A stretch of 64,000 nucleotides of DNA, from positions 124,001-188,000 of the IMG/VR virus record IMGVR_UViG_3300044638_006750; one strand, 5' to 3'. The notes under the pieces are model-generated. The model was not told the origin of the DNA. It worked only from the letters and a program-made list of their open reading frames with translations, and did not search any database. Below, one piece after another: positions 3,484-64,000 of this stretch. The position numbers and the translations under genes were made by a program. Numbering within the stretch: position 1 is the stretch's first letter; the number at the start of each line of letters is the position of its first letter.

Positions 3484-5571
3484 ATGTCAACTCCGACACC
3501 TACTGCAACCCCTACTGGCTCGCCTCCTCCTACAGCAACTCCAACGAGAACAGCAACCAGAACGCCAAATAATACTCGTACTGGTACTGCTACTGCTACT
3601 TCTACGCCAACACGAACACCAACTAATACCAATACTTCTACTCCTACCCCTACTCCTACGTCTACTCAGACACCAACACCAACAACAACTCAAACTAGTA
3701 CTCCGACCAGAACTCAAACCAGAACACCTACAAAAACACCCACAGCGACCCCTACTAATACTTCTACTACGACTAAAACACCAACCAATACAAAAACCCC
3801 AACCGCTACAAAAACTTCAACTCCAACAAACACTGCTACCCCATCAAACACGCCAACTAATAGTAAAACTCCAACACAAACATCTACTAGTAATAAAGTT
3901 TATATATGTACTACTAGAACTAATACTCCAACAGGTACTCCAACTCCATCACCCACTAATACAAATACTCCATCGGTTACATCTACCAAGCCACTTAATT
4001 CTAATGAATATTACCTTAGTGATGATCTAAGAAAAATATCTCATGAAAAAGAAACACTACCGACTATTACTGTTTATGTCGATAAAGTTATAGTTGAATG
4101 TTTATGTCTAGACAATCCATTACAAAAAAAGAAATTAGTAAAAGGAGCTTCATTATTTAAGGATGAAATCACTTCTGTTATTTGGTTGATTAGAGAATTT
4201 CAGAATATCCTTGGAACAACTGCAACAGTTTTCTTCTTAAGGGCATTGGATGAAGAAGCAGGAAAAACTGAAATCTATAAGATTGGTGACTCATATGTGC
4301 CAGGACCTATTACTCCTACACCCAAACCAACAGAACCATACGTTTTCATTATTTCAGAAACCCCGACGCCAACACCGAATATTAGTTCTAGTACTATAGT
4401 TTCCGAAGTGATTAGAATATGTCCTACAAATACTCCTACACCATCTATCACTCCTACACAAACACCAACTAATAGTCCAACACCAAGCGCTACTACTACG
4501 AAGACACCCACAAACACCCCAACCAATACAACGTCTAATACTCCAAGCCCTGGCCCCTTACCCATTAAATATTTTATTGGTCCAAGATTAGCTGAAGGCG
4601 AAACATCTCTACAATTCAAAGGTAAATTTGCGTATATGCCATCTGAAGAAGATAGCGGACTGGTTCAGTGGGTCGGTGATACTTTGGAAGGCACAGGTAA
4701 GCTATTAGCTTTAGACCTAAATGGCAATGTAACAACGGTAGAACTATCTAAAAAATATGGTGTTCTCAATGACAGAATTAATCTTCAACCCCCGGCACCT
4801 GATGTAGTAAGAGAAGAGATATTTGTTGAATTAAGATGGCCAGTTAAATGTCAACCAGTAGGTCAGCTTAAAATTCCTTTCAAGGTTGAAAGATATGTTC
4901 CTCCTCCTACACCTTCCCAATCAGTGAGTAGTAGTCCAACTAATACTCCAACACCAAGCATTACAAAAACATCAACACCATCTAACACCCCGTCGAATAC
5001 TGTTACAAAAAGCAATACTCCGACCAATAGTCCGAGTCTGTCTGCTTCTTGTTCATCTAAGCCTACATCAACACCAACACCAAGTGTTTCTATAACGCCC
5101 ACACAAACTTGTAGTAATACTCCCACACCAACACCTACAGAATCTAAATATTCTAATTGTGTTTTAGTTCCAGCGCCCTATCCTGACCCTATAGAATATG
5201 ATGAAGAAACACAAGAATTAATTATTTTAGGAGATGTTAGTTTTACTACTCCAACACCATCTCCGACAGTCACGGGGTCTGTAACACCAACTCCATCGGT
5301 TACTGTGTCTGCAACGCCGACCAATACTCCTACTCCATCAGTTACTAGAACATCTACTCCTTCAGTGACCCCGACCAGAACTCCAACCAATACTCCAACA
5401 AACACTCGGACACCAACTCCTACTAACACTAGTACCCCATCTAATACTTTGACCGTAACACCGACACAGACACCAACCGCCACAGTCACCTATACCAGAA
5501 CTCCGTCACAGACACCAACCAAAACACCGACAGGTACTCCAACAAGCACATATACTCCCACCAGACCATGA
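3484..5571 (+). CDS. Mucin-like Thr/Pro-rich protein (PTxT repeats), putative virion fibre/surface protein
   Basis: 695 aa; several blocks of TPT(x)T repeats separated by non-repetitive segments; no signal peptide evident. Confidence 0.8.
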   Translation: MSTPTPTATPTGSPPPTATPTRTATRTPNNTRTGTATATSTPTRTPTNTNTSTPTPTPTSTQTPTPTTTQTSTPTRTQTRTPTKTPTATPTNTSTTTKTPTNTKTPTATKTSTPTNTATPSNTPTNSKTPTQTSTSNKVYICTTRTNTPTGTPTPSPTNTNTPSVTSTKPLNSNEYYLSDDLRKISHEKETLPTITVYVDKVIVECLCLDNPLQKKKLVKGASLFKDEITSVIWLIREFQNILGTTATVFFLRALDEEAGKTEIYKIGDSYVPGPITPTPKPTEPYVFIISETPTPTPNISSSTIVSEVIRICPTNTPTPSITPTQTPTNSPTPSATTTKTPTNTPTNTTSNTPSPGPLPIKYFIGPRLAEGETSLQFKGKFAYMPSEEDSGLVQWVGDTLEGTGKLLALDLNGNVTTVELSKKYGVLNDRINLQPPAPDVVREEIFVELRWPVKCQPVGQLKIPFKVERYVPPPTPSQSVSSSPTNTPTPSITKTSTPSNTPSNTVTKSNTPTNSPSLSASCSSKPTSTPTPSVSITPTQTCSNTPTPTPTESKYSNCVLVPAPYPDPIEYDEETQELIILGDVSFTTPTPSPTVTGSVTPTPSVTVSATPTNTPTPSVTRTSTPSVTPTRTPTNTPTNTRTPTPTNTSTPSNTLTVTPTQTPTATVTYTRTPSQTPTKTPTGTPTSTYTPTRP
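3487..5568 (+). repeat. Low-complexity degenerate coding repeats (ACN-CCN-ACN) in about four blocks: ~3490-3990, ~4300-4555, ~4900-5150, ~5245-5568
   Basis: Repeats are conserved at protein level (TPT/PTNT/PTRT/PTKT) but synonymous-diverged at DNA level. Confidence 0.8.
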
Positions 5572-16895: not shown

Positions 16896-17073
16896 TAATT
16901 ACCACTGCTGTTCCTGGGGCAAAAAAAGTTTTGTTAGCCGCATTGGACACGTCCTCTGCATTAATAGATTTGCAACAGCTAACCTTAATCGTATCAATTT
17001 TTCTATACTGAGTGTCAGAACCATGAACTTTAAATTCTTGTCCAACATTTAGCTCAGAAAATAGTTTATTCAT
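16888..17073 (-). CDS. Small hypothetical protein between the polymerase halves
   Basis: GGAGG SD then ATG at 17073; overlaps both neighbours. Confidence 0.7.
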   Translation of the reverse strand: MNKLFSELNVGQEFKVHGSDTQYRKIDTIKVSCCKSINAEDVSNAANKTFFAPGTAVVING

Positions 17074-44155: not shown

Positions 44156-45241
44156 TTATACACAATTTATGATCTTGTCGGCAGAGTTATCCCATGAAAG
44201 CCTTTGGGCCGTATCTAGACCATTTGGATTTGTTTTAATATTATTCTTATATACATATCTTAAATGATCAATAATTTGATCTATTTGAGACTGTCCCAGT
44301 TTAGCCCAATTACCTTGTCCTCTAAAATATTTACCATCATATGCTGGCTCTGTCTCATTAATATCGACCATAAAACAATTGTCACTGGTGCAAAACTCTG
44401 TGTGTGCAGAGTAGTTGCTAGCTATAGCAGGTTTATTCATCGCCATTGTTTCTAGCAATTCAAGATTCCACCCTTCGGCTCTTGATATATAAACACCACA
44501 ATCTATATATGCTAATAATTTGGCAACGTCATTGTGCGTTTGTAGTTGCGGAAACACTTTAACTTTATCCTTTAGTTTACTATTTTGATACATTGTTTCC
44601 CATTGAACCTTTTCTTCTGGGAGGATATATCCATTATCGGAGGAGGCATTAATCCATAATTCAAAGTTTTCATTATTGGGAAATGCTTTCTCAAAAATAT
44701 TTAAAAGTATATCATGACATTTTCTAATCTCCCACTTACCAATAACAGAGAATATATATTTGTCTGGTTTATTTGTAATTTTATTAACTAGCGTATGATC
44801 GAATATGGAAGTATCAACACCCAATGGAACAACCGTTATAGGTGTTTTGATGCTATATTTATTCACTAATATATCTTTAGCCCAATGACTAGCAACATAT
44901 ACATGATCACAGCAACGGAAATTATGTTGTTCAATATTTGTTATTGTATCTAATTCAAAAAATGGGAAAACCCTATATTCGCCAGATCCTATGCGAGAAG
45001 CTAAATCCCAAGCGTGCCATATCTTGAGAGATACAGCTTTGTGATTATAACTATTTCTATTTTCTAGAGCTTGTTCTATAAGAGGTATTTTGTTCTGATT
45101 TATAGCTATGGGTTGGCCAATAGGAAATAGTGAAGTTTTTACACCCCGCTCCATAAGAGCCACTAGTATATTACAGCCAGCCACCCCATATCCTGTGTAA
45201 GTTACGGGTGCTTGTAGATTTATTTCTGATAATTTGCTCAC
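44156..45241 (-). CDS. GT4 glycosyltransferase
   Basis: TGYG, VPLGVD, GKWEIRK, SRAEGWNLELLETMAMNKPAI. Confidence 0.88.
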   Translation of the reverse strand: MSKLSEINLQAPVTYTGYGVAGCNILVALMERGVKTSLFPIGQPIAINQNKIPLIEQALENRNSYNHKAVSLKIWHAWDLASRIGSGEYRVFPFFELDTITNIEQHNFRCCDHVYVASHWAKDILVNKYSIKTPITVVPLGVDTSIFDHTLVNKITNKPDKYIFSVIGKWEIRKCHDILLNIFEKAFPNNENFELWINASSDNGYILPEEKVQWETMYQNSKLKDKVKVFPQLQTHNDVAKLLAYIDCGVYISRAEGWNLELLETMAMNKPAIASNYSAHTEFCTSDNCFMVDINETEPAYDGKYFRGQGNWAKLGQSQIDQIIDHLRYVYKNNIKTNPNGLDTAQRLSWDNSADKIINCV

Positions 45242-46345: not shown

Positions 46346-46348
46346 GTT

Positions 46349-49721: not shown

Positions 49722-50949
49722 AGTTATATTTTTCTTTTAGTTCTGTGATCGGCATATTTCTATTCTCTTCACTATTTAAACTTAAATTAACAATCAATGT
49801 TGTATACACATATTGTTTTTTTATATAGTTCCATAATATTTTATTGTGTTTAGATGATTCTCTATCAAAATGATAATGCATTACTAATTTAAGCAAATAG
49901 TCGTATGGCATGTCTGGACTATGATATTTAATATACTCTGGCATTACAGACTTACAAAACTGCATATATTCCTGAAATAAAGGATTTCCAGTAGCATATA
50001 TAGAAGTTCCTCCATTAATATGGCTATTTAATAAGGACGAATATGATTCATTACTAACGCCATCATACTGAGAACCAGAAATTAAAAAAGGTTGGGATGA
50101 ACAGTATTTAACCAGTCTATCTAACCACTTATCAGATAGATAACAGTCGCACTCCAACAATAAGCTAGAGTTGTATTTTCTTAACAAATCCATAACTGCA
50201 AAGAAAACATAGTTTGGACCCGATTTATATCCGTATAGAGGGATTACATTTTCATCACAATCAGAATTTTTTCCCCAATAAATATCTAAGTCTTGAGGGA
50301 TATCTAAATAAATAATCTCTAAATGTTTAAATTTGTTTTTTAAATTATTGATACCATTATTGTTTTCATAAAATTGTTGATCATATTTTTTATTAGCTAT
50401 AATTATTAAATCTATATTTTTTGACAAATCGGCATTGGTGTTTTTATCTATCTGGTCTAAGAAATTAAGATATGAGTTATCGGTAATTTCTTGTTCACCT
50501 GTTGCCAGTAAACAAATACATTCTAGGTTATTTTCATAGTGTTTAATGCTATCAAGCGAACAATACTGAGAGATATCTTTAAATAATCTAGTATCTTCTT
50601 TATTGACTTCAAAATATGACAATATATGATCATTTGTAATTAAAGTTTTATCTATTTCATTAAAATCTTTTTTTAAGTTATTAATAATTTGTTTAATATT
50701 ATGATATTTTTTTTCATATAATTGAATTAGAGTATAATAATACCATTCTGAAAATTCAATATTCTTGCTTTCCAACACTAAATTAATTTTTTCATCAATA
50801 TTATCTATCAGTTCTGAGAGTTTGTAGTATGGCCAAGACTGATTGGGGTTTAAATTAATAGCTTTATATAATAGTTCTTTAGCTATTTCTGGTTGATTAT
50901 TTTTAATACACAGCATTGCAGCTTTAGCGTATTCTTCCCAATTATTCAT
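49699..50949 (-). CDS. TPR + putative glycosyltransferase-like domain protein
   Basis: N-terminal TPR (LYKAINLNP), LLECDC. Confidence 0.5.
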   Translation of the reverse strand: MNNWEEYAKAAMLCIKNNQPEIAKELLYKAINLNPNQSWPYYKLSELIDNIDEKINLVLESKNIEFSEWYYYTLIQLYEKKYHNIKQIINNLKKDFNEIDKTLITNDHILSYFEVNKEDTRLFKDISQYCSLDSIKHYENNLECICLLATGEQEITDNSYLNFLDQIDKNTNADLSKNIDLIIIANKKYDQQFYENNNGINNLKNKFKHLEIIYLDIPQDLDIYWGKNSDCDENVIPLYGYKSGPNYVFFAVMDLLRKYNSSLLLECDCYLSDKWLDRLVKYCSSQPFLISGSQYDGVSNESYSSLLNSHINGGTSIYATGNPLFQEYMQFCKSVMPEYIKYHSPDMPYDYLLKLVMHYHFDRESSKHNKILWNYIKKQYVYTTLIVNLSLNSEENRNMPITELKEKYNYAILHKK

Positions 50950-53104
50950 TATATCTTTCTATATTAGAGATGCCTAAATTTTTGATAATATCTAAGAATT
51001 TTTTTTGATTAATAGCTTGAAATTTTTTAGTGCCTTTTAAAATATCTGTTCCGCTAGAGGAACCCTCGTCGTGAATAGCCTCGCATCTTGGATCATATAT
51101 GGTTTTTAATCCATAAAAATGAGCCCTGTACTGCCATTCACTATCTTCATAATACATAGAATCTAATTCATGGCTAAAAACACCTATTTTATTAATTGCT
51201 CCTCTTTTCATATATAATAAACATCCTGAGCAATATCCAGTATATTTAGGAATATTATATTTATAAGTTTTAGGATGGTCATATCTACCTTTATTCAAAC
51301 CAGTACCATCACTGTATAACTCTGCTCCAGCTTCAGCTAGTCTTCCGTCAGGATATATTGTTTTACCTCCAGCCGCCGCTATATAATCTGCTATATATGC
51401 GCTAGAATATAAATAATTTAACCAATATTTATCTATAATTTCAATATCATCATTAATTAATAATATATCTGACTCTTTGTATCTTGGATCAAGCATAATC
51501 TTATTATTTGGAATAATAAAATATTCATTTTGATTGTTTTTTATATATTCAATAGTATTAGGATATATTTGAACATATTTTTTTAATAGTCTCTCGGTTT
51601 CTTTATTTGTTCCATTATCTGTAACTACAATTTTATAATTTAAATAAGATGTTTTTTGTAAAATAGAATCTATACATTTACGTAATTTTTTGGGTTGATT
51701 ATATGTAACTATACTAATTGTAACTTGTTTATCTTGTAGCGTGTGTTTGAGAACATTGATAGCAGACTCTTTGGATACTATTTTATCTAGATGTTCTTTC
51801 CCGGCCTCACCCAGCTGTATTTTTTGTTTATTTTTAAGACTAAAATAGTACTGTAGACCATCTATAAATTCAAAATTAGATTCTGCTATAATAGCATGGT
51901 TTTTATGTATAAAATTAATACCTTCGTTTCCTATACTGGAAGTTATAATAGGAATGCCACTCATACCAGCATCACATATTTTCCCTTTTATGCCTGCTCC
52001 CCAATTTAGAGGAGCAATTAATATACTTGTTTTTTTATATACATCAGAAATTTTTTCTATACAACCCAAGTATTCTATAGAAGGATCAGAAGAGATATTA
52101 TCTTGTATTGTTTTATCTAAATTTGGACCAATAAGTAATAGTTTTGGTTTTATTTTAAGATTATTGTATATATTAGTTAGTTGAAAACTTTTAAAAATTT
52201 CTATAGATCTAATAGCACCATCTAGATTGGGACCATGGGCGTAATTTCCTATAAAAACTATATTATTCCCTAGTTTACAAGTATGTTTGTGATGAATATT
52301 GCTTAATATTTTAATGTTATGATTATATCCTATTTCATCTTGTATATATTCTTTATCTTTTTCTGTAACGGCAAAAATTACATTAGCAGATAAATATACT
52401 TGTTTTTCTATTTTTTTACGAACATCAAGAATGGATTGTTGTATATTTAAGTGTCCAGAGTCCTTTCCTCGCTGTTCTCTAATCCAGTGTACATCAACAG
52501 TATCTATAATAATTTTAATATTTGGATAATATTTTTTTACGATGTCAAGATATTGATTAGCTATATCATACCAAGAAAAAATTACATTGTCAAAAACAAT
52601 ATTTGATTTTTTAGCTTTTTTTAAATATGTGTCTAAGTATATTTGTTTGTCTATGTCTGGCAAAAAATATGGTATTTTTATAGCGTCTAGAGCATCTAGA
52701 TATTTTTTTTTAGAGGATCCATTACAAAGAAACCAGACATTATATTGCAGATCTATTTTTAATATTTTAAGTATCTCTAATAATCTATTGCCTCCGCTGC
52801 TGGTGTCGTAGTCTGGCGCCATTGGCGAAAAATATAATAGATTTTTACCATTATTCCAAATTTCTGGCACCAGTTCATGTGATGAAACGGTCTCTGAAAA
52901 CGATGGAACAATTTTTTTGTAAGCTCTATTCTCTTTACGTCCATATAAAATATAATGTTCTTTAGCCTTTTGTTCATCGTCTATACCGGCGACTATGAGG
53001 TCAGGATGTAACAGCGTATAAATAATAGGATCAAAATCTTTAGGTAGCAAAAATCCATATTGCTCAACAACTCTTTTGGTATATGTATTTGAAACCCATC
53101 TCAT
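50942..53104 (-). CDS. GT4 + GT2 fusion glycosyltransferase
   Basis: FDP..Y...HPD..HY..YGRKE repeat motif; PLNWGAGIKGK; IVTYN..LLINDD..YEDSE. Confidence 0.85.
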   Translation of the reverse strand: MRWVSNTYTKRVVEQYGFLLPKDFDPIIYTLLHPDLIVAGIDDEQKAKEHYILYGRKENRAYKKIVPSFSETVSSHELVPEIWNNGKNLLYFSPMAPDYDTSSGGNRLLEILKILKIDLQYNVWFLCNGSSKKKYLDALDAIKIPYFLPDIDKQIYLDTYLKKAKKSNIVFDNVIFSWYDIANQYLDIVKKYYPNIKIIIDTVDVHWIREQRGKDSGHLNIQQSILDVRKKIEKQVYLSANVIFAVTEKDKEYIQDEIGYNHNIKILSNIHHKHTCKLGNNIVFIGNYAHGPNLDGAIRSIEIFKSFQLTNIYNNLKIKPKLLLIGPNLDKTIQDNISSDPSIEYLGCIEKISDVYKKTSILIAPLNWGAGIKGKICDAGMSGIPIITSSIGNEGINFIHKNHAIIAESNFEFIDGLQYYFSLKNKQKIQLGEAGKEHLDKIVSKESAINVLKHTLQDKQVTISIVTYNQPKKLRKCIDSILQKTSYLNYKIVVTDNGTNKETERLLKKYVQIYPNTIEYIKNNQNEYFIIPNNKIMLDPRYKESDILLINDDIEIIDKYWLNYLYSSAYIADYIAAAGGKTIYPDGRLAEAGAELYSDGTGLNKGRYDHPKTYKYNIPKYTGYCSGCLLYMKRGAINKIGVFSHELDSMYYEDSEWQYRAHFYGLKTIYDPRCEAIHDEGSSSGTDILKGTKKFQAINQKKFLDIIKNLGISNIERYNE

Positions 53105-53784
53105 ATGATTAAATCAGTATTGTAAAAATTTTGCAATAATTGAATTTCGTATTTAATTTTATTACATATTATGTTTTTTACTTTGTCTCCTATTATAGAA
53201 TCAGAATCAACAGGAGACCTATTCATATGGTGATTAGTAATATGTAGTTGAAACGGATTTGAGTCATTAAAAATTTCACAAAGTTTTTGATTTTCTACCT
53301 GAAAAATAAAGTTATATTTTTTAAGTTCTTCTATAGCAATCTCATATTTTTCTTTTAAAGATTTTTCTTTATATTTCACATTAGTTAAATATTCTATAGT
53401 CATATTGCCAAATCTGTCTAAGTAATTATTAAGCAAATTTTCTGAAAGGTTGTCTATGTGTTGACCATAAAAATAATGAATGTGGCTTATCACTCGTTTA
53501 ACAGGATCTCTGATAGTCAGTATTCTGTATGTGTCTTCTATAGAAAGCTTAAAAATATCTTCTATATAATAGCTGGGACTATGGTCTATGAACATCAGAG
53601 TATCAGAGTGAATTGTGTCTATTAAATGAGGTTGTTCATATAAACACATATTTCCATGAGTAAATTGCGAGATATATGCTGGGGCTTGTTGAAAATGTTC
53701 GTTGTTCTTATAGCCTTCATAAAATCCTCTTTTAAGACTGGACCCTCCACATCTGGGAATATGATTTAAAACTAAGTATTTCAT
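53101..53784 (-). CDS. PAPS-dependent sulfotransferase (Sulfotransfer_2-like)
   Basis: HIPRCGGSS (5'-PSB), IRDPVKRVIS (3'-PB). Confidence 0.8.
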   Translation of the reverse strand: MKYLVLNHIPRCGGSSLKRGFYEGYKNNEHFQQAPAYISQFTHGNMCLYEQPHLIDTIHSDTLMFIDHSPSYYIEDIFKLSIEDTYRILTIRDPVKRVISHIHYFYGQHIDNLSENLLNNYLDRFGNMTIEYLTNVKYKEKSLKEKYEIAIEELKKYNFIFQVENQKLCEIFNDSNPFQLHITNHHMNRSPVDSDSIIGDKVKNIICNKIKYEIQLLQNFYNTDLII

Positions 53785-55405: not shown

Positions 55406-56188
55406 TTATTTACAGTTTAATTGATATAATGATATATTGATATCTAAAATATTTGTACGCAGTGGAACCTCATGAATTTCTGCATCATGATGGTTGTGAT
55501 ATATAGTAAAAGCATCTGGATGATTAATGCCAGATTTATAAAAACGATCAATAATTGGATAATAACTATAGTATCCGTTTGGTTTAACTGCCTCAGCAAA
55601 TTTACGATCCCCTACTACTTCTCCTCTGAGATATCCAAATTTTTCCCATATATGTCGAGGAACGGCGAACTCTGTACAATTAAGCCAATGTACCTTTTGT
55701 ATTAAATGCCAATCTTCTATATTCTTTTCAATATTTCTACATGTAGACAAAGCTGATCCGCCATAAGCTTTTTGATCATCTTTTATAAAAGATTCATATA
55801 GTGTTTCATAAAATAATAGATAGTCTTTAGCTAATACCGCATCATCTTCAGTAAAAATTACATAGTCGCTATGCTGGAAACACTCATCAATTAAGATTTT
55901 TGCTCCTTTATATGGTCCAACATTATTATTAGATAATTTAATTATTATATTTTTATATAAGTATTTTTTCTGTTCTTTATAGCTATAAATATAGTTAATC
56001 ACATGTTTATTTGCAGCATACCAATGACTCCTATTGTTATAGGACATATTATGAGTATTGTCAATAAAAAAAACAAGAGTATATTTTTCTTTTCCTATAC
56101 ACTTTTCTAAAGACGCGAGCAAATCTTGAAGTGTGTCTATTTTTACAAAACACTGTATTCCTATTACGTAATTATTTTGTTGTTGCAT
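55406..56188 (-). CDS. GT-A glycosyltransferase
   Basis: LVFFID, VIFTEDD. Confidence 0.6.
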   Translation of the reverse strand: MQQQNNYVIGIQCFVKIDTLQDLLASLEKCIGKEKYTLVFFIDNTHNMSYNNRSHWYAANKHVINYIYSYKEQKKYLYKNIIIKLSNNNVGPYKGAKILIDECFQHSDYVIFTEDDAVLAKDYLLFYETLYESFIKDDQKAYGGSALSTCRNIEKNIEDWHLIQKVHWLNCTEFAVPRHIWEKFGYLRGEVVGDRKFAEAVKPNGYYSYYPIIDRFYKSGINHPDAFTIYHNHHDAEIHEVPLRTNILDINISLYQLNCK

Positions 56189-57173
56189 AGTGGTCTAGTG
56201 TCCACGCTATAGTTTTTTTCATAGATGTATCAAAATCTACTTTTGGCTTCCAGCCCATATTAGCTAGTTTTGTTCCGTCTAGAGCATATCTACGGTCATG
56301 TCCTGGCCTGGTTTTATGAAAGTCTACATATTCTAATATTGGTGTCTTGTTCATTATATTGCCAATATATTTAACTATTTCATCATTTTTAAATTTGGTA
56401 TCACCCACTACATTATAATGTTCACCAGATATACCGTGTTCAAGTAAAAATAAAGTAGCATTTGCAGCGTTTCTAGCATGGAGCCAGTGTCTTTCTCCAA
56501 CATATTCAATTTTTCCATCATCATCTATTTTGGAATGTATTGGTATGGGTAGGTCATGAACAATATGATGTATAGCTTTCGCTATTAATTTTTCTTTATT
56601 TTGTCTTTCACCAAACATATTCATCGTATATGTTGTAATAATTGGAAGACCATATGTGACATGGTAACTGATTCCAGCAGCGCCTTGTCCGCACTTACTT
56701 CCACTATATGGATTAGACGGCCTCCATCTATCGTCCTCTTTGTAATCATAATCGTTTGGTGCGGGCCCAAAAACCTCATCTGTTAAATAATTGATAAATA
56801 CTGCGTCAGGATTAGTTTTTCTATACCATTCCAGTAAATTAACTGTGCCAATTACATTATCCTCAAAAAATTGTTTTGGATGAGTAATACTTCTGTCTAC
56901 ATGACTATTAGCAGCAAGATGAATAATATAGTCTACTTTTCCTATGCTTTCTGAAAGATGATCTGAAATATCATATTTTAAATCATGATACAAAAATTTA
57001 ATTCTATTTTGAGAATTCTGTATATGTTTACTCATCACAAGTCTATTCATATCTCCTATGTTAGAAAGTCTACATAAGGCGATAATATCCCAATTAGTAT
57101 CGACCAGAACCTCTTCTATCATATGAGAACCAAAAAATCCTGCCGCGCCAGTAATAAGAACAGTTTTTTTCAT
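56172..57173 (-). CDS. rfbB: dTDP-glucose 4,6-dehydratase-like extended SDR
   Basis: TGAAGFFG, HLAANSHVDRSI, TDEVFG, PYSGSK, RPGHDRRYALD. Confidence 0.88.
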   Translation of the reverse strand: MKKTVLITGAAGFFGSHMIEEVLVDTNWDIIALCRLSNIGDMNRLVMSKHIQNSQNRIKFLYHDLKYDISDHLSESIGKVDYIIHLAANSHVDRSITHPKQFFEDNVIGTVNLLEWYRKTNPDAVFINYLTDEVFGPAPNDYDYKEDDRWRPSNPYSGSKCGQGAAGISYHVTYGLPIITTYTMNMFGERQNKEKLIAKAIHHIVHDLPIPIHSKIDDDGKIEYVGERHWLHARNAANATLFLLEHGISGEHYNVVGDTKFKNDEIVKYIGNIMNKTPILEYVDFHKTRPGHDRRYALDGTKLANMGWKPKVDFDTSMKKTIAWTLDHYATTK

Positions 57174-57893: not shown

Positions 57894-58833
57894 ATAATGA
57901 TTGATATATTTCTATAAATTCTTTAGATCTCGTTGGTAATACGTCTTCATTATTTATTAATTTTAACGTATTTCTATATCCAACAATTTCATTTTCTAAA
58001 TTTTTAATTAAGTCCTGAGGATTTCTATCTTGATAAACAGATGCCTTATTATATATAAGAGAATTTGGAAAAACTCTTTGTATAGTATAGGATGGCCATA
58101 TGTCATCCATTCTCCCAACATGAGGAAGAACATAATAGTGTTTCATTACAGATTTATGTAAAAATGTATTTTGGCTATTAAATGGAGATATGTTAGTGCT
58201 ACAATATGGTCTGGTAATATCAAATTTAACTAGTGGTTTATATGATAGTCTACACATAGCATCTATATCTGGATCCCCATCCCACAAATCAGCTTGAATC
58301 AATGGTTTAAGATGTGTTTTCCCTCTATATATAAAAGAATTTTTTTTCCATAAAAGCTCTATAGGAAATCCTCTGTGCCATAAATGAGGGTAGTTTGTTA
58401 CGGAAAGAGGATCGAATACGCCGCTGTCATTTTCATACAGATCACACTCTATAGTTTTATCTATATGTATGTCCGATGACCATGAATCATATGGTATATT
58501 ATCATCATCTACCGTAGCTATAATAGTATTATTAGTTTTTGATGCATATATAAATCCTATATTTCTTCTTTGAATAGAATTCCATCCTATATTATCTGAT
58601 AATTCTTTAAGAGAATATTCTTGTTCATCTGGATGTATATACTGAACAGCTTTTCCGTGTTCTTTAGCTAATTTTTGATATAGTTCATGTGGAGTTTTTT
58701 TATCTCCAACTATAAAAAATATATATTCTTTTTCTTGAGCAATTTTACAAAACTTTATAGTCGCCTCTGTTGGGCTATTGATTGTTGTGGTAACTATACT
58801 AATACTCATTTTTGATAAACGCTTTCTAGCCAT
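57886..58833 (-). CDS. STELLO/DUF288-like glycosyltransferase
   Basis: IVTTTIN.PT, VGDKKTP, RRNIGF, VDDDN, RGFP, GRMDDIW. Confidence 0.72.
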   Translation of the reverse strand: MARKRLSKMSISIVTTTINSPTEATIKFCKIAQEKEYIFFIVGDKKTPHELYQKLAKEHGKAVQYIHPDEQEYSLKELSDNIGWNSIQRRNIGFIYASKTNNTIIATVDDDNIPYDSWSSDIHIDKTIECDLYENDSGVFDPLSVTNYPHLWHRGFPIELLWKKNSFIYRGKTHLKPLIQADLWDGDPDIDAMCRLSYKPLVKFDITRPYCSTNISPFNSQNTFLHKSVMKHYYVLPHVGRMDDIWPSYTIQRVFPNSLIYNKASVYQDRNPQDLIKNLENEIVGYRNTLKLINNEDVLPTRSKEFIEIYQSLYE

Positions 58834-59777
58834 TTATATAGCTTAATAGTACCATCCTTAAGTGGGTAGTTTGGCTGCCATCCTAGTTTTTGTTTAATAA
58901 GAGTATTATCAGAATTTCTACCCTTGACACCCTCTGGACCAGGAATATTTTTAATAGTTAAATTTTTACCAGATATATCAATAATCATTTGAGTAAAATT
59001 ATTAATGCTAATCATTTCATCAGAACCTATATTCACAGGACCAGAAAAATTAGATCTGTTTAATCTAATAATGCCTTCCACACATTCGTCTACGTATAAA
59101 AATGACCTAGTTTGATTGCCACTACCCCAAATTTCAATAGTGGAATTATTGGGGGCTTCTAAAACTTTTCTGCATAGTGCTGCTGGAGATTTTTCCCTGC
59201 CCCCTTTGTATGTGCATTCTATACCAAAAATATTATGAAATCTAGCAACATGAATATTTAAACCAAAATTACGTTGGTATGCAAGATAAAGTCTTTCACT
59301 AAATAATTTCTCCCAGCCATACTCACTATCTGGTTCAGCAGGGTATGCTGAAGCTTCGTTGCATTTAGGATTGTCTGGATCTGTTTGATTATATGCTGGA
59401 TATGCACAAGCGCTGCTACTATAGAATAAAGATCCGACGCCATATTTATGAGCATACTTTGCAACCAACAGGTTTATAGATGCGGAGTTAGTCATAACAT
59501 TAGCGTCATTTTCTCCTGTAAAAATATATCCCGCGCCTCCCATATCAGCAGCTAATTGATATATTTCATCGAATGGTTTATTGTTGGAATCTAATAAAAC
59601 AGCTGATACAGTATCCTCGTCTGTAAGATCCCCTATAATAAATTCATCTGCTGGACTAATAGAATAAGCAGGATGGTGAAGATCGACACTACGAACCCAT
59701 AGTCCTTCAAGCTTTAGTCTTTTGACTAAATGAGATCCTATAAATCCTCCGCCTCCTAATACTAATGCAGTTTTCAT
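58806..59777 (-). CDS. GDP-mannose 3',5'-epimerase-like NAD-dependent epimerase
   Basis: GGGGFIG, LAADMGGAGYI, YSSSACAYP, SEYGWEK, RFHNIFG, GREKSPAALCRK. Confidence 0.88.
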   Translation of the reverse strand: MKTALVLGGGGFIGSHLVKRLKLEGLWVRSVDLHHPAYSISPADEFIIGDLTDEDTVSAVLLDSNNKPFDEIYQLAADMGGAGYIFTGENDANVMTNSASINLLVAKYAHKYGVGSLFYSSSACAYPAYNQTDPDNPKCNEASAYPAEPDSEYGWEKLFSERLYLAYQRNFGLNIHVARFHNIFGIECTYKGGREKSPAALCRKVLEAPNNSTIEIWGSGNQTRSFLYVDECVEGIIRLNRSNFSGPVNIGSDEMISINNFTQMIIDISGKNLTIKNIPGPEGVKGRNSDNTLIKQKLGWQPNYPLKDGTIKLYKWLESVYQK

Positions 59778-59786: not shown

Positions 59787-60344
59787 TTACTCCTTAATTA
59801 TGTACCAGCTGTGATCTAAAAAGGTTTTAAGCGAAGTATTTTTATTTAAAATAAACTCATCTATAGCTTGTTTGGTTCCTGGATGATCTATACTGTAATC
59901 ATGTCCAGCTAAAATACCACCACTTATTAGTTTTGGATACCAAACAGAAATGTCTGTTTTCACATTATCATAGTCATGATTACCATCTATATAAACCATA
60001 TCTATAGATTCATTTGCAAATCTAGAACAGGCTTTTGTTGATATGGTTTTTAACTTTTTACATCTGTTGTTTTTAATAAAATCTTCCAATCTAGCATCAA
60101 AAATTTTTTCATAGATCGGATTTTGGTTCCATGGATCGACACAATGTATAGAATGAATATTTTCAAAGCCAAGAAAAATAGTTGTGGATTCACCAAGGTG
60201 AGAACCTATTTCAACCAAATTATTAATATTGGGTTTATCTTTTAGTATACTATTTATCATACTAATTAGTCCAACAACTTGGCTAGACTCAGCATCTGAC
60301 CACCAAGGGAAAAATCGTACAGACATAATATAATTAGTGTCCAT
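59787..60344 (-). CDS. Class I SAM methyltransferase (Methyltransf_24-like)
   Basis: VEIGSHLGES, VDPW, YIDGNHDY, GGILAGHDY. Confidence 0.88.
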   Translation of the reverse strand: MDTNYIMSVRFFPWWSDAESSQVVGLISMINSILKDKPNINNLVEIGSHLGESTTIFLGFENIHSIHCVDPWNQNPIYEKIFDARLEDFIKNNRCKKLKTISTKACSRFANESIDMVYIDGNHDYDNVKTDISVWYPKLISGGILAGHDYSIDHPGTKQAIDEFILNKNTSLKTFLDHSWYIIKE

Positions 60345-61139: not shown

Positions 61140-61169
61140 TTGACAGAGCTAAAAACGAGCTTATATATT
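61140..61169 (+). promoter_or_regulatory. Rightward sigma70-like promoter
   Basis: TTGACA-N16-TATATA or TTGACA-N18-TATATT. Confidence 0.55.
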
Positions 61170-61232: not shown

Positions 61233-62891
61233 ATGCATAATACAACTCTCGTTACGGGTATATGGGATCTTGGTAGGTCTGGACTAGAAGAGGGGTGGTC
61301 AAGGAAATTTGATCATTACGTAGACCACTTCAAGAGGCTGCTAGAAGCAACAAAAGACACGAATATGTGTGTTTTTATAGATCCTGAGCACGAAAAGATA
61401 GTATGGGATGTACGAGATAAAAGCAACACAGCAGTCATTAATCAATCTGCAAAATCATTTAACAGTAGTTTTTTTCCATTTTTTGATAAAGTACAATCTA
61501 TAAGAACCAATCCAGACTGGTATAATCAGGTTGGATGGCTTAAAGAAAGCACACAAGCTAAAATGGAATGGTATAATCCGATGGTTATGAGCAAAATGTT
61601 CATGCTGCATAACGCTAAATGCTATAACATATTCAATACAGACTATTATTTTTGGATAGATGGAGGTATAACTAATACTATACATCCTGGATATTTTTAT
61701 CATGACAAAGTAATAGAAAAAATAGAACAATTAGTTAATAAATTCTTGTTCGTATGTTTTCCATATGAAACAAATAGCGAAATACATGGTTTTAAGATAG
61801 ATGCCATGAAAAAATTCGCACAATCAGAAATTGTCAATAGGGTTGCAAGAGGAGGATTTTTTGGTGGACATAAAGAATTTATATCATATGCAAATGATAT
61901 GTATTATGGTCTTCTAAGAGACTCATTGAACGAAGGGTTGATGGGAACCGAAGAAAGTATTTTTACATTAATGACTTATCTTGATCCTGAAGTTTTTCAG
62001 GTAGAAATGATTAATGATAATGGTTTGCTTGGTACATTTTTTGAAAATGTGAAGGACAATAAAACAGAATTAGCTAAAAGTATTAGTCCTAAAAAAGTAT
62101 CTCATAAAAATAATGATATTATAGTATATATTAATGCTTTCAATTCTCCAGAGCAACTACAAATGGTTTGCGATTCTTTTGAAAAGAACGATAAAGCCTT
62201 TTTAACAGACACTAAAATTTATCTTATTAATAATACCACAAAAGAAGAACTATTTCCTATATACGATAAAATATCAGAAAAATATGGTTTTACAGAAATA
62301 AGGAAAGGCAATATTGGGGTTTGTGGAGGTAGGCAACTAGCCGCCGAACACTTCGCTGAGTTGGGTGCAAAATATATGTTATTTTTTGAAGATGATATGT
62401 TGGTTGATAGTGGAGAAAATAGATATTGTAAATTTGGTTTTAGAAAAAATATTAGCAATTTATTAAAAAACTCTATCTCTATTATGGATATAGAGAACTA
62501 TGATTTTTTGAAGTTAACATTTAGTGAGTTTTATGGTAATAATTCAGAACAATGGGCGTGGCATAATGTGCCAGGAGAGAGGAAAATAGAATACTTTGGA
62601 AATATAAAAAAAAGACCACAAACAAAGTTTTCTTCTATAAAAACATTTAACGGTATTCCATATGCAGAGGGAGAGATTTACTATTCCAACTGGCCTCATA
62701 TTATATCTCAGGACGGAAACAAGAAAATGTTTCTAGACACTACATGGGCGCATCCTTTTGAACAGACATGGATGAGCCATATTTATACATTAACAAGAGA
62801 AAACCAAGTTAAGCCTGCAATTCTTTTAGCTAGTCCAATAACACATAATAGGGTGCATTTCTATGAAGCGTCAGAGAGGAAAGAAAACTGA
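61233..62891 (+). CDS. HtrL/YibB (WlaTC)-like domain + GT-A domain fusion
   Basis: TTLVTGIWDLGR, SKMFML, FWIDGG, GGFFGG, GTEE; C-terminal LFFEDD. Confidence 0.72.
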   Translation: MHNTTLVTGIWDLGRSGLEEGWSRKFDHYVDHFKRLLEATKDTNMCVFIDPEHEKIVWDVRDKSNTAVINQSAKSFNSSFFPFFDKVQSIRTNPDWYNQVGWLKESTQAKMEWYNPMVMSKMFMLHNAKCYNIFNTDYYFWIDGGITNTIHPGYFYHDKVIEKIEQLVNKFLFVCFPYETNSEIHGFKIDAMKKFAQSEIVNRVARGGFFGGHKEFISYANDMYYGLLRDSLNEGLMGTEESIFTLMTYLDPEVFQVEMINDNGLLGTFFENVKDNKTELAKSISPKKVSHKNNDIIVYINAFNSPEQLQMVCDSFEKNDKAFLTDTKIYLINNTTKEELFPIYDKISEKYGFTEIRKGNIGVCGGRQLAAEHFAELGAKYMLFFEDDMLVDSGENRYCKFGFRKNISNLLKNSISIMDIENYDFLKLTFSEFYGNNSEQWAWHNVPGERKIEYFGNIKKRPQTKFSSIKTFNGIPYAEGEIYYSNWPHIISQDGNKKMFLDTTWAHPFEQTWMSHIYTLTRENQVKPAILLASPITHNRVHFYEASERKEN

Positions 62892-64000
62892 TAATTTGAT
62901 TTTTGTACAGATAGCGTCATATCGTGATCCAGAGCTATTGAATACTCTAAGAGATATGATTAATAATGCTGTACATCCAGAAAATCTTAGAATCGGTATC
63001 GCTTGGCAGCATAGCGATGCAGACAGTTGGGATAAACTTGATGAATTTAAAGATGATTCTAGGTTTAGAATTCTAGACATCAATTACAAAGACTCTAAGG
63101 GTGTTTGTTGGGCGAGAAATGCCGTTCAACAACTATATGATGGAGAAAAGTACACCCTACAACTAGATTCACACCATAGATTTGCAAAAGACTGGGATAA
63201 AACTTTAATAGATATGCTAGTAGGACTACAAAAGGAAGGCTATGCAAAGCCCCTTATTACTGCATATATACCTAGTTTTGATCCAGAACATGATCCGGAA
63301 AAAAGGGTTCAAGAACCATGGAAAATGAATTTCGATAGATTCATACCCGAGGGCGCAATATTCTTTTTGCCAGCATCTCTTGAATCTTTCAACGATAAGG
63401 ATAGACCTATTAAGGGAAGATTCTATTCTGCTCATTTTGCTTTTACTGTTGGAGAATTTTGTAAAGAAGTTCCACATGATCCTAATTACTACTTTCATGG
63501 AGAAGAAATTAGCATAGCAGTTAGAGCATATACTCATGGTTATGATATATTTCATCCTCATAAAGTTGTTTGCTGGCACGAATATACTAGAAAAGGCAGA
63601 TCAAAACAATGGGACGATGATCCTGTTTGGCCTCAAAGAAATAATGATTCTCATATGAGAAACAGAAAGTTGTTCGAAATGGACGGATTAACAAATGATA
63701 TTGATTTTGGTCCATGGGGTTTTGGTAAAAAGCGTACAGTAGCAGATTATGAGAAATATGCAGGTATATCGTTTAAGAAAAGAGCTGTACAAAGATACAC
63801 ATTAGACCATAAAGAGCCGCCAAATCCAACTTATGCCACAGAAGAAGAATATCAAAAATCATTTCTGAATATCTTCAAGCACTGTATTGATATTGGCTAT
63901 TCTCAAGTACCCGAAACAGATTATGATTTCTGGTGTGTTGCATTTAAAGATGAAAATGGTCAGGATCTTTATAGACAAGATGCTGATGAAGCAGAAATTG
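62863..64000 (+). CDS. GT60/PF11397-like polypeptide GlcNAc-transferase; open to the window end, absent from the ORF track
   Basis: Manual translation from ATG 62863 is stop-free: IFVQIASYRDPEL, GIAWQ, SKGVCWARN, LQLDSHHRF, FHGEEISIAVRAYTHGYDIFHP. Confidence 0.85.
   Translation, partial: MKRQRGKKTDNLIFVQIASYRDPELLNTLRDMINNAVHPENLRIGIAWQHSDADSWDKLDEFKDDSRFRILDINYKDSKGVCWARNAVQQLYDGEKYTLQLDSHHRFAKDWDKTLIDMLVGLQKEGYAKPLITAYIPSFDPEHDPEKRVQEPWKMNFDRFIPEGAIFFLPASLESFNDKDRPIKGRFYSAHFAFTVGEFCKEVPHDPNYYFHGEEISIAVRAYTHGYDIFHPHKVVCWHEYTRKGRSKQWDDDPVWPQRNNDSHMRNRKLFEMDGLTNDIDFGPWGFGKKRTVADYEKYAGISFKKRAVQRYTLDHKEPPNPTYATEEEYQKSFLNIFKHCIDIGYSQVPETDYDFWCVAFKDENGQDLYRQDADEAEI

What the first reader, a model, noticed from the sequence alone, without database searches (positions are those of the whole stretch)
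62863..64000. Hidden GT60-like polypeptide GlcNAc-transferase: initiator of a phage mucin-type O-glycosylation system
An ORF missing from the track runs stop-free from ATG 62863 to the window end, with GT60/PF11397 hallmarks IFVQIASYRD, DSH and FHGEE (seen). GT60 enzymes attach the first alpha-GlcNAc to protein: to hydroxyproline of Skp1, or to Thr of mucin-like repeats in Dictyostelium and Trypanosoma (established). The same genome carries a PTxT-repeat protein plus elongating GTs, nucleotide-sugar enzymes, a sulfotransferase and a methyltransferase. I infer a complete initiator-elongator-decorator-acceptor pathway that coats the virion with mucin-like glycans. I cannot confirm from the sequence alone that this is undescribed.
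Basis: partly seen in the sequence, partly recalled or inferred. Interest (0 to 1): 0.85.

Follow-up and report, generated by a model that had tools for sequence, protein, structure and literature searches.

The report
Phage GT60-type protein glycosyltransferase cassette
A jumbo-phage gene cut off by the window's end encodes an enzyme of the family that starts mucin-type sugar chains in protists; with a conserved partner enzyme it probably sugar-coats threonine/proline-rich phage proteins, but no experiment has shown this.

Summary
Window 62863-64000 (+) holds the first 379 codons of a 425-codon gene that continues in the source contig. It matches Pfam PF11397 (CAZy GT60) at E 6e-75. D102, H104, E214, E215 and H239 are invariant, the fold model is confident, and its nearest solved folds are all polypeptide GalNAc-transferases.

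The gene is not unknown to databases. PHROG 24687 holds it, relatives number in the thousands, and Xanthomonas phage XacN1 ORF334 is a homologue. It looked hidden because the window truncates it.

The conserved unit is not the neighbouring sugar-nucleotide, methyltransferase and "sulfotransferase" cluster, most genes of which recur in 1-3, and none in more than 14, of 80 related loci. It is a pair: the GT60 gene plus a two-domain glycosyltransferase (HtrL_YibB N-domain, 552 aa). The pair is adjacent in 70 of 80 loci, kept in cultured jumbo phages, and fused into one chain elsewhere.

Thr/Pro-rich proteins abut GT60 genes more often than chance (17 observed, 4 expected). XacN1 virions carry Schiff-positive proteins. 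In this window, however, the PTxT gene lies 57 kb away. Donor sugar, acceptor and the initiator role remain untested. No prolyl hydroxylase was found. The sulfotransferase call falls below threshold.

The parts
62863..64000 (+). First 379 of 425 codons of the GT60-family (PF11397) glycosyltransferase. The GT-A catalytic domain covers about residues 1-320 and the start of a C-terminal beta-rich domain follows. The gene ends 140 nt beyond the window (L001 11278).
61233..62891 (+). Conserved partner, 552 aa, with two GT-A domains. The N-terminal domain matches HtrL_YibB (PF09612). The C-terminal domain has an invariant E386-D387-D388. Its stop overlaps the GT60 start by 29 nt.
   Evidence: Pfam E 9e-12. 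Adjacent in 70/80 loci. Kept in XacN1, Xoo-sp13 and RAS14 at 38-42% identity. Fused to GT60 in P0190, P0234, P0191 and P0173. Model pLDDT 87; Foldseek finds two-domain enzymes LH3, K4CP, LARGE1 and PmHS2.
61140..61169 (+). Best sigma-70-like promoter match (11 of 12) in the divergent intergenic region ahead of the plus-strand operon HtrL552-GT60-(four more genes beyond the window). This is a consensus match only.
   Evidence: operon continuation.
3484..5571 (+). 695-aa Thr/Pro-rich (PTxT-type) repeat protein with short globular inserts and no hydrophobic segment. It is the candidate acceptor. It is syntenic in close relatives, with lengths of 388-695 aa.
   Evidence: weak phrog_15511 match.
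2..3478 (+). C-terminal 1158 aa of a 2266-aa protein that the window start truncates. A 1923-aa protein precedes it. These giant proteins of unknown function lie directly upstream of the PT-rich gene.
50942..53104 (-). 720-aa fusion of a GT4-type and a GT2-type glycosyltransferase. It belongs to a strain-specific glycan cluster.
56172..57173 (-). GDP-mannose 4,6-dehydratase-like SDR (sugar-nucleotide synthesis); homologues in 7 of 80 related loci.
   Evidence: E 2e-49.
58806..59777 (-). NAD-dependent epimerase/reductase-type SDR (sugar-nucleotide synthesis); homologues in 3 of 80 related loci.
   Evidence: E 4e-37.
59787..60344 (-). Class I methyltransferase (Methyltransf_24); homologues in 14 of 80 related loci.
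   Evidence: E 1e-18.
53101..53784 (-). The Sulfotransfer_2 match is sub-threshold, so the function is not established.
   Evidence: 19.8 bits against a cut-off of 22; no NCBIfam hit.
44156..45241 (-). GT4-type (Glycos_transf_1) glycosyltransferase.

Best explanation
The ORF is the 5' 89% of a 425-aa soluble, metal-dependent GT-A glycosyltransferase of family PF11397/GT60, carried by an uncultivated jumbo phage of about 233 kb. It forms a conserved two-gene core with the upstream 552-aa two-domain glycosyltransferase. In relatives these two 'anchor' genes bracket or adjoin a fast-changing cassette of tailoring enzymes: fucosyltransferase-like, GT34-like and GT2 enzymes, methyltransferases and carbamoyltransferases.

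Most likely mechanism: in the infected cell's cytoplasm the GT60 enzyme transfers a first sugar from a UDP-sugar onto Thr/Ser hydroxyls in Thr/Pro-rich linker or repeat segments of phage proteins. By family precedent that sugar is an alpha-linked HexNAc. The two-domain partner and the variable enzymes then extend and decorate the chain.

Shown here: family membership, fold, conserved catalytic residues, the conserved and sometimes fused GT60-HtrL pair, absence of membrane segments, and non-random adjacency to T/P-rich proteins.

Inferred: donor sugar, anomeric linkage, protein acceptor, order of action, and presence of the glycoproteins in the virion.
For: Family and chemistry:
- PF11397 matches at E 6e-75.
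- D102, H104, E214, E215 and H239 are invariant in 42 homologues at 34-92% identity.
- The AF2 model has pLDDT 94 and pTM 0.90.
- The top 29 PDB fold matches are all polypeptide GalNAc-transferases, E 3e-9 to 7e-7.
- GT60 enzymes start mucin-type O-glycans in Dictyostelium and T. cruzi (PMC8724618).

Pathway partner:
- The HtrL552 gene is adjacent in 70/80 viral loci and lies within 10 kb in 33/80 bacterial or MAG loci.
- It is kept in Xanthomonas and Stenotrophomonas jumbo phages.
- It is fused to GT60 in single polypeptides.
- Cassette genes in relatives are glycan-tailoring enzymes.

Soluble pathway:
- No 19-residue hydrophobic segment occurs in 26 of the 27 proteins checked (25 cluster and operon proteins, the PT-rich protein and its neighbour); one has a single marginal segment. 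No flippase or polyprenyl-phosphate transferase was seen among the proteins scanned.

Acceptor:
- 17 of 69 T/P-rich ORFs in 160 loci lie within 500 bp of the GT60 gene against 4.0 expected. After removing near-duplicate loci the count is about 13 against 3.6, Poisson 1e-4.
- In L080, L063 and L053 the order is giant protein, PT-rich protein, GT60, cassette, HtrL552 (followed by another PT-rich protein in L080 and L063), all on one strand; L075 has the same order as far as GT60.
- In Xoo-sp13 and XacN1 the cassette lies beside baseplate-wedge genes. In Xoo-sp13, XacN1 and RAS14 it lies beside a giant protein of more than 3,100 aa that has a 35-45 aa PT/PS linker.
- XacN1 virions show Schiff-stained bands (PMC5852040).
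Against: - No biochemical datum exists for any phage member of the family.
- In this window the PT-rich gene is 57 kb from the GT60 gene. In its arrangement class (S8 protease downstream) only 11 of 46 loci have a PT-rich ORF within 10 kb.
- The adjacency signal could partly reflect the cassette sitting near structural genes, which are themselves rich in PT linkers.
- Proteins with 2-5 tandem GT60 domains exist and L075 has two adjacent paralogues. Not every GT60 domain need therefore be a peptide-directed initiator.
- The partner resembles polysaccharide polymerases, and HtrL_YibB proteins are otherwise linked to lipo-oligosaccharide loci (PMC4172580).
- The glycoproteins of XacN1 were not identified.
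Confidence: 0.55

Rival explanations
1. The GT60 enzyme and its partner build a glycan that is not protein-linked. This could be a free or carrier-linked polysaccharide, or a remodelled host envelope glycan (lipo-oligosaccharide or capsule), with GT60 adding HexNAc to a sugar acceptor rather than to a peptide.
For: - The partner's N-domain belongs to HtrL_YibB, a family seen in LOS loci (PMC4172580).
- The whole partner resembles two-domain glycosaminoglycan and matriglycan polymerases K4CP, PmHS2 and LARGE1.
- Tandem arrays of up to 4-5 GT60 domains suggest sugar-to-sugar transfer.
- Sugar-nucleotide genes lie nearby.
Against: - The cluster proteins checked show no flippase, polymerase, ABC exporter or polyprenyl-phosphate transferase and no clear membrane segment (one protein has a single marginal hydrophobic stretch).
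- The closest folds to GT60 are peptide-directed enzymes.
- There is excess adjacency to PT-rich proteins.
- In the cultured jumbo phages the cassette lies by giant-protein genes, and in Xoo-sp13 and XacN1 also by baseplate-wedge genes.
Confidence: 0.2
2. The enzyme glycosylates host proteins in the cytoplasm as a takeover or anti-defence effector, rather than phage structural proteins.
For: - The enzyme is soluble and cytoplasmic.
- GT60's Skp1-modifying branch acts on a cytoplasmic regulatory protein (established family knowledge; PMC8724618).
- In five Burkholderiaceae loci (L136, L149, L151, L158, L164) catalytic-domain-only homologues have an 800-1050-aa ORF on the opposite strand about 4 kb away. 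The L149 ORF is confirmed as VgrG and the L151 ORF looks the same by eye. This hints at effector-like use of the fold.
Against: - A whole variable glycan-tailoring cassette and a polymerase-like partner are hard to reconcile with a single regulatory modification.
- There is adjacency to PT-rich and giant proteins.
- XacN1 virions carry glycoproteins.
Confidence: 0.1
3. The enzyme glycosylates phage DNA (hydroxymethylated bases) to evade restriction.
For: DNA glycosylation is the classic role of phage glycosyltransferases. The window carries a large replication and nucleotide-metabolism module, a dNMP kinase and a nucleoside deoxyribosyltransferase-like gene.
Against: - Known GT-A DNA glycosyltransferases of phages are JGT/TarP-like with R...DDD...EDY motifs (bioRxiv 10.1101/2023.12.21.572611). 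This protein instead has DxH...H and ppGalNAc-T-like folds.
- No pyrimidine hydroxymethylase, TET/5mYOX or C5-methyltransferase was found among the ORFs scanned. Not every ORF was scanned.
- The gene is in a glycan cassette, not beside the replication genes.
Confidence: 0.04

Closest known systems
Polypeptide alpha-GlcNAc-transferases of CAZy GT60 (Dictyostelium, Trypanosoma cruzi), which start mucin-type O-glycans on Thr
   Same: Same Pfam family, PF11397, at E 6e-75. Same GT-A fold and invariant DxH...H and GEE motifs. Thr/Pro-rich candidate acceptors are encoded in the same genome and often next to the gene. Like the protist GT60 enzymes, it lacks the ricin-type lectin domain of animal enzymes (PMC8724618).
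   Different: It is soluble, with no type II membrane anchor, and would act in a bacterial cytoplasm. It has its own conserved C-terminal beta-rich domain of about 90 residues with no detectable relatives. Donor, linkage and acceptor are untested. It is paired with an HtrL_YibB-type two-domain enzyme not known from the protist pathways.
Gnt1, the cytoplasmic Skp1 hydroxyproline GlcNAc-transferase (GT60)
   Same: Same family; soluble and cytoplasmic.
   Different: No prolyl 4-hydroxylase was found in the 10 kb downstream or among the window ORFs scanned. Oxygenase-GT60 fusions exist in Chlorophyta but not here.
Animal and apicomplexan polypeptide GalNAc-transferases (GT27)
   Same: They are the closest solved structures, taking ranks 1-29 with TM 0.42-0.54 normalised to the query. 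They have the same type of DxH metal motif (recalled, not superposed here).
   Different: There is no sequence-level match to any PDB chain, even with a profile. There is no ricin B lectin domain. It belongs to a different CAZy family.
Xanthomonas phage XacN1 ORF334 with ORF330-333, and the same cassette in Xoo-sp13, RAS14 and CM1
   Same: It is homologous to the GT60 gene (48-53% identity), the HtrL552 gene (38-42%) and the 293-aa gene. The XacN1 authors saw Schiff-positive virion proteins and proposed that the phage's own glycosyltransferases make them (PMC5852040).
   Different: There a carbamoyltransferase sits in the cassette, which lies beside a giant protein with one short PT/PS linker (and, in Xoo-sp13 and XacN1, beside baseplate-wedge genes). 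The authors did not recognise the family, the partner or the PT link. The glycoproteins were not identified.
Virus-encoded virion glycosylation: mycobacteriophage capsid and tail-tube glycans, and chlorovirus PBCV-1 Vp54
   Same: In both, virus-encoded cytoplasmic glycosyltransferases decorate the virus's own structural proteins (as summarised in PMC12619734 and PMC5852040).
   Different: The enzyme families and acceptor type differ. Here a GT60 enzyme and PT-rich segments are proposed, and nothing is yet shown experimentally.
Two-domain glycosyltransferases (E. coli K4 chondroitin polymerase, PmHS2, LARGE1, LH3/ColGalT1), as analogues of the partner HtrL552
   Same: Both have two GT-A domains in one chain. 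LARGE1 extends an O-glycan on a mucin-like protein (recalled).
   Different: TM scores are only 0.22-0.29, because inter-domain geometry is uncertain (pTM 0.57). There is no sequence-level family match beyond HtrL_YibB for the N-domain.

Membership tests
Pfam PF11397 'GlcNAc' / CAZy GT60 | Sequence match to the family profile above the curated threshold | tested here: met
   253 bits against a cut-off of 21, E 5.8e-75, covering profile positions up to 351 of 352. The PF11397 to GT60 mapping is as stated in PMC6418280.
Pfam PF11397 'GlcNAc' / CAZy GT60 | GT-A fold with a DxH motif and a downstream His (metal site) plus the acidic GEE motif | tested here: met
   The model has pLDDT 94 and its fold matches are GT-A enzymes. 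D102, H104, E214, E215 and H239 are invariant in 42 sequences. The assignment of these residues to the metal site is by analogy and was not superposed.
Pfam PF11397 'GlcNAc' / CAZy GT60 | UDP-GlcNAc donor with retention (alpha-linkage) | not testable with these tools
   Needs an enzyme assay and linkage analysis.
Pfam PF11397 'GlcNAc' / CAZy GT60 | Polypeptide acceptor (Thr of mucin-like repeats, or hydroxyproline) | tested here: inconclusive
   The evidence is indirect only. T/P-rich ORFs abut GT60 genes 17 times against 4.0 expected. In this window the T/P-rich gene is 57 kb away.
Skp1-type Gnt1 pathway (GT60 subgroup) | Coupled prolyl 4-hydroxylase that creates the hydroxyproline acceptor | tested here: not met
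   No 2OG-oxygenase was found in the 10 kb downstream or among the window ORFs scanned. Not all small ORFs were scanned.
Golgi-type pp-alpha-GlcNAcT (GT60 subgroup) | Type II membrane anchor | tested here: not met
   There is no hydrophobic segment. The N-terminus is basic and disordered.
GT27 polypeptide GalNAc-transferases | Family-level sequence similarity and a C-terminal ricin B lectin domain | tested here: not met
   No PDB sequence hit, even with a profile. There is no ricin domain, and the C-terminal domain has no recognisable relatives. The similarity is at fold level only.
Phage DNA glycosyltransferases (GT-A, JGT-like) | R...DDD...EDY active-site motifs, and co-location with a hydroxymethylase or 5mYOX | tested here: not met
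   The motifs differ. No such partner genes were found among the scanned ORFs.
HtrL_YibB (PF09612), for the partner gene 61233-62891 | Match to the family profile | tested here: met
   Pfam gives 45.5 bits against a cut-off of 24.1 for residues 3-257. The NCBIfam equivalog cut-off is not reached (49.5 against 264.9). It is therefore a distant family member, not a YibB orthologue.

The most novel reading that the evidence does not exclude
A widespread, self-contained phage system for cytoplasmic mucin-type O-glycosylation. A GT60 initiator and a two-domain extender form a conserved core around a rapidly diversifying tailoring cassette. The system decorates Thr/Pro-rich linkers of giant baseplate or fibre proteins and stand-alone PT-repeat proteins. 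It is shared by freshwater jumbo phages, Xanthomonas and Stenotrophomonas jumbo phages and many elements in bacterial genomes. This would make PT-rich 'linkers' in phage proteins glycan carriers, and would place a supposedly eukaryotic O-glycan initiation chemistry in viruses of bacteria.
Probability: 0.35. Interest if true: 0.8.

Novelty: new variant of a known kind. Interest (0 to 1): 0.6.

Why it matters
Protein glycosylation by phage-encoded enzymes is documented for very few phages, and GT60 is treated in the literature as a protist family that starts mucin-type glycans.

This work finds a large, mostly viral branch of GT60: 4,715 clusters at 50% identity. It has a constant partner enzyme, a hypervariable tailoring cassette, and a statistical link to Thr/Pro-rich proteins. 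If these enzymes really glycosylate virion proteins, three things would follow:
- It would explain the abundant PT-rich proteins of large aquatic phages.
- It would identify a probable determinant of virion surface properties such as adsorption, protease resistance and recognition by hosts or grazers.
- It would offer soluble bacterial-cytoplasm enzymes for making mucin-type glycoproteins.

The hypothesis is directly testable in cultured phages (XacN1, Xoo-sp13, RAS14).

If the hypothesis is wrong, the gene is just one more annotated phage glycosyltransferase of unknown acceptor.

Tried and rejected
- Near-identical DNA in 50,697 phage records: none.
- PDB sequence search with the single protein and with a 44-sequence profile: no GT60 structure exists there.
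- NCBIfam gave nothing for the GT60 protein or six cluster proteins.
- PHROGs gave nothing for the giant proteins.
- ESM Atlas on the C-terminal domain and on the globular part of the PT-rich protein gave only sub-threshold scores.
- BLAST found no similarity between the giant proteins of this lineage and those of the Xanthomonas and Stenotrophomonas phages.
I rebuilt the alignment without those rows.
- The idea that the upstream minus-strand cluster (sugar-nucleotide enzymes, methyltransferase, 'sulfotransferase') is part of a conserved pathway with GT60 was rejected. Its genes recur in only 1-14 of 80 related loci.
- The Skp1/hydroxyproline route was rejected for lack of a hydroxylase.
- The DNA-glycosylation reading was judged unlikely.
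- I could not tie the contig to the published 'moraphage' lineage, because there are no shared identifiers.
- The paper on mycobacteriophage virion glycosylation is not held.
- A PqqD-like look of the small PT-tailed proteins upstream of GT60 in L102 and L104 was not confirmed.
Full report
**Observation.** Window 62863-64000 on the plus strand is open for 379 codons. It begins at the first ATG after an in-frame stop at 62839, and chance would give such a run about 3e-12 of the time at this base composition. Pfam PF11397 ('GlcNAc', the family CAZy calls GT60) matches at E 5.8e-75, and PHROG 24687 'glycosyltransferase' matches at E 1.7e-155.

The window comes from IMGVR_UViG_3300044638_006750 (232,683 bp). 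There the gene continues for 46 more codons, to 425 aa (L001 10001-11278). It was 'hidden' only because it runs off the window. The window is 33% G+C. It carries a phage replication module (DNA polymerase in two ORFs, primase, DnaB-like helicase, UvsX-like recombinase, ribonucleotide reductase) between 12 and 32 kb.

**The protein.** An alignment of 42 homologues at 34-92% identity has D102, H104, E214, E215, H239, R85, W111, D112 and R221 invariant. AlphaFold2 on that alignment gives pLDDT 94.3 and pTM 0.90. The model has a GT-A catalytic domain to about residue 320 and a beta-rich C-terminal domain at about 335-425.

No PDB chain matches by sequence, even with a profile. I found no solved GT60 structure by sequence. 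By fold, ranks 1-29 are all polypeptide GalNAc-transferases of GT27, including human T4, T2, T1, T7, T10 and T12, fly PGANT9 and Toxoplasma T3. After them come wall-teichoic-acid and polysaccharide GT-A enzymes. In the viral model library the best matches are 'Glycosyltransferase, GlcNAc' of uncultured Caudovirales, Megaviridae glycosyltransferases and a Pandoravirus 'N-acetyl-glucosamine transferase'.

The protein has no hydrophobic segment. The C-terminal domain has no recognisable relative.

**How common it is.** More than 7,600 proteins in the 5.8-billion-sequence set match. The 50%-identity library holds 4,715 matching clusters, 1,023 of them at E below 1e-30. IMG/VR has 148 matching stretches, of which the 80 best were analysed; many sit on contigs of 100-290 kb. 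ESM Atlas clusters of the family are 80-97% viral.

Among 50,697 deposited phage genomes only four carry it: Xanthomonas phages XacN1 and Xoo-sp13, and Stenotrophomonas phages RAS14 and CM1, at 48-53% identity. The family's presence in phages is therefore catalogued. However, I found no paper that studies it. 'GT60' with 'phage' returns only a list of viral auxiliary genes in a sponge virome, and 'PF11397' returns a brown-alga genome paper. Only open-access literature was searchable.

**What is conserved around it.** I called ORFs in the 80 viral loci (GT60 gene with up to 10 kb on each side) and clustered them.
- The 552-aa gene immediately upstream in the window (61233-62891), whose stop overlaps the GT60 start, is present in 70 of 80 loci. 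Several of the remaining loci have very short upstream flanks.
Most of its genes recur in 1-3 loci, the GDP-mannose-dehydratase-like gene in 7, and the methyltransferase in 14. The 'sulfotransferase' is a sub-threshold hit.
- Downstream, the operon continues beyond the window with 333-aa and 293-aa proteins of unknown family and two methyltransferases. These too are variable, recurring in 13-24 loci.
- An S8 protease, a trypsin-like protease, an HNH protein, an actin-like 'volactin' and a RuvB-like ATPase follow, and recur in 23-46 loci.

**The partner.** Its N-terminal half matches HtrL_YibB. This is an uncharacterised family seen in lipo-oligosaccharide loci (PMC4172580). The model (pLDDT 87) shows two GT-A domains, the second with an invariant E-D-D. 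Foldseek returns two-domain glycosyltransferases: LH3, K4 chondroitin polymerase, LARGE1, ColGalT1 and heparosan synthase. E values reach 5e-10, but TM scores are low because the domain arrangement is uncertain.

The same pair occurs in XacN1 (ORF334 and ORF330), Xoo-sp13 and RAS14, together with a homologue of the 293-aa gene. A carbamoyltransferase lies between them. It also occurs in 33 of 80 loci from bacterial genomes and MAGs with G+C from 29 to 72%.

Single polypeptides that join the two exist. P0190 and P0234 are GT60 followed by HtrL552. P0191 is HtrL552 followed by two GT60 domains. P0173 also has a methyltransferase inserted. Conserved adjacency over this evolutionary distance, together with gene fusion, is strong evidence that the two enzymes act in one pathway.

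In relatives where the two genes are apart, the genes between them are GT34-like, GT10 fucosyltransferase-like and GT2 enzymes, a weak PLOD-GT-like hit, methyltransferases and DUF3431. This is a hypervariable tailoring cassette between two constant anchors.

**The acceptor question.** The 695-aa protein at 3484-5571 is 42% Thr+Pro, with PTxT-type repeats, short globular inserts and no signal peptide. It follows two giant proteins. The window ORF 2-3478 is only the C-terminal half of a 2266-aa protein, which is preceded by a 1923-aa one. This order is kept in the three closest relatives found, with PT-rich proteins of 388-561 aa.

It is 57 kb from the GT60 gene, so the window alone gives no linkage. 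Across relatives the picture is more telling. In L080, L063 and L053 the order on one strand is giant protein, PT-rich protein, GT60, cassette, HtrL552, followed in L080 and L063 by another PT-rich protein. L075 shows the same order as far as GT60, and L042 and L066 have a PT-rich protein directly upstream of GT60.

I applied one criterion to all 160 loci: an ORF of at least 100 aa with a 40-residue window of at least 70% T+P+S, at least 55% T+P, and at least 20% each of T and P.
- In viral loci, 8 of 48 PT-rich ORFs lie within 500 bp of the GT60 gene, against 2.7 expected.
- In genome loci, 9 of 21 do, against 1.3 expected.
- Combined, that is 17 against 4.0. Dropping near-duplicate loci leaves about 13 against 3.6, Poisson 1e-4.

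The adjacent proteins are diverse: Cys-knot modules, BNR-like repeats, and small proteins with PT tails.

In Xoo-sp13 and XacN1 the cassette lies next to baseplate-wedge genes. In Xoo-sp13, XacN1 and RAS14 it lies next to a giant protein of 3,138-3,313 aa with one 35-45-residue PT/PS linker near its C-terminus. XacN1 virions contain at least two Schiff-positive bands, and its authors proposed that ORF328 and ORF334 are responsible (PMC5852040).

There are caveats:
- The expectation assumes a uniform distribution of ORFs over the flanks.
- The cassette often sits near structural genes, which may be PT-rich for other reasons.
- In the window's own arrangement class only 11 of 46 loci have a PT-rich ORF within 10 kb.
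- No glycopeptide has been mapped in any of these phages.

**Mechanism proposed.** Established for the family: GT60 enzymes transfer alpha-GlcNAc from UDP-GlcNAc to Thr of mucin-like domains, or to hydroxyproline of Skp1 (PMC8724618).

Shown here:
- The phage protein has the family's fold and conserved catalytic residues.
- It is soluble.
- It is locked to a two-domain glycosyltransferase and a variable tailoring cassette.
- It is non-randomly adjacent to PT-rich proteins.

Inferred: it adds the first HexNAc to Thr/Ser in PT-rich segments of phage proteins in the cytoplasm. HtrL552 then adds the next sugars or a repeating disaccharide. Strain-specific enzymes then fucosylate, methylate, carbamoylate or otherwise decorate the chain. 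In this phage those enzymes include a GDP-6-deoxyhexose route (dehydratase plus reductase/epimerase), GT4/GT2 enzymes and three methyltransferases.

I put this at 0.55. The rivals are a non-protein glycan (0.2), host-protein modification (0.1) and DNA glycosylation (0.04). They are set out in the Rival explanations section with their evidence. Tandem multi-GT60 proteins are the main reason to doubt that every GT60 domain is a peptide-directed initiator.

**Comparison and novelty.** The protein passes the sequence and fold tests for PF11397/GT60. It fails the tests for the Golgi-anchored subgroup (no membrane anchor) and for the Skp1 subgroup (no hydroxylase). It resembles GT27 enzymes in fold only.

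As a gene it is a new member of a known family, already named in databases. As a system it is a variant of virus-encoded virion glycosylation that I could not find described. That system is a GT60 plus HtrL-type core with a variable cassette, linked to PT-rich proteins, spanning aquatic jumbo phages, Xanthomonas and Stenotrophomonas jumbo phages and many bacterial-genome loci.

**Verdict.** Interest is 0.6. It would rise to about 0.8 if protein O-glycosylation of PT-rich segments were demonstrated.

Noticed in passing
L001 16837-17838 (-), about 6 kb beyond the window end: An actin-like protein matches Pfam 'Volactin' (PF25216) at E 2e-63. It is conserved in 35 of 80 related phage loci, next to a RuvB-like ATPase. 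An actin homologue in a jumbo phage may bear on intracellular organisation.
   Followed up: partly
window 14573-18943 (-): The DNA polymerase appears split. ORF 17066-18943 matches the first half of phrog_405 and ORF 14573-16189 matches the second half. A separate RNase_T/DnaQ-type exonuclease gene (16191-16895) lies between them.
   Followed up: no
window 12771-14108 (-): A further GT4-type glycosyltransferase (445 aa; phrog_2170, Glycos_transf_1) lies inside the replication module, far from the glycan cluster. Its target is unknown. Of the glycosyltransferases in the window, it is the one whose position would best fit a DNA-related role.
   Followed up: no
window 2-3478 (+); L084 903-13477: The first ORF of the window is only the C-terminal half of a 2266-aa protein. 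A 1923-aa protein precedes it. Neither matches any PHROG or Pfam family.
   Followed up: partly
L149 12270-15131 (-); also L136, L151, L158, L164: In Ralstonia, Paraburkholderia, Trinickia and Achromobacter loci, homologues matching only the catalytic part of the query (up to about residue 320-340, though one extends to 407) have an 800-1050-aa ORF on the opposite strand about 4 kb away. The L149 ORF is a VgrG spike gene (PDB VgrG E 2e-123) and the L151 ORF looks the same by eye. The other three were not examined. This may be a type VI secretion-linked use of the GT60 fold.
   Followed up: partly
P0122, P0121, P0127 and others: Many relatives are giant proteins with 2-5 tandem GT60 domains (for example 2461 aa with four). 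P0122 also ends in a region with an H-x-D...H pattern that looks like a 2OG-oxygenase by eye; this was not tested. ESM Atlas lists viral fusions of GT60 with Glyco_transf_7 and with O-FucT domains, and Chlorophyta oxygenase-GT60 fusions.
   Followed up: partly
L001 14792-16478 (-): A subtilisin-type S8 protease and a trypsin-like protease lie side by side just after the glycosyltransferase operon. They recur in 43-46 of 80 loci. Their relation to the glycan cassette or to PT-rich linkers is unknown.
   Followed up: no
L102 8438-9232 and L104 9212-9952 (+): In Gemmatimonadaceae MAG contigs the gene directly upstream of GT60 encodes a small protein with a globular N-domain, a hydrophobic stretch and a long PT-rich tail. 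The N-domain looked PqqD/RRE-like by eye, but no PDB sequence match was found.
   Followed up: partly
window 45245-46879 (-), 42952-43554 (-), 39353-40018 (-), 41192-41782 (-), 28356-29078 (-): Auxiliary genes are present: IMPDH/GMP-reductase family, nucleoside 2-deoxyribosyltransferase-like (sub-threshold), ferritin-like, ClpP-like protease, a sigma-70 region-4 protein and PhoH.
   Followed up: no
L090-L101 (genome contigs): The closest bacterial-genome hits (56-70% identity) include several contigs binned with Saprospiraceae, Bacteroidia, Cytophagaceae and Arcticibacterium MAGs, one of them 230 kb, alongside bins of other phyla. These are probably phage contigs binned with their hosts, which weakly hints at Bacteroidota hosts. 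The published 'moraphage' lineage of aquatic jumbo phages, with predicted Bacteroidota hosts and four core glycosyltransferase groups, may be related but could not be matched.
   Followed up: partly
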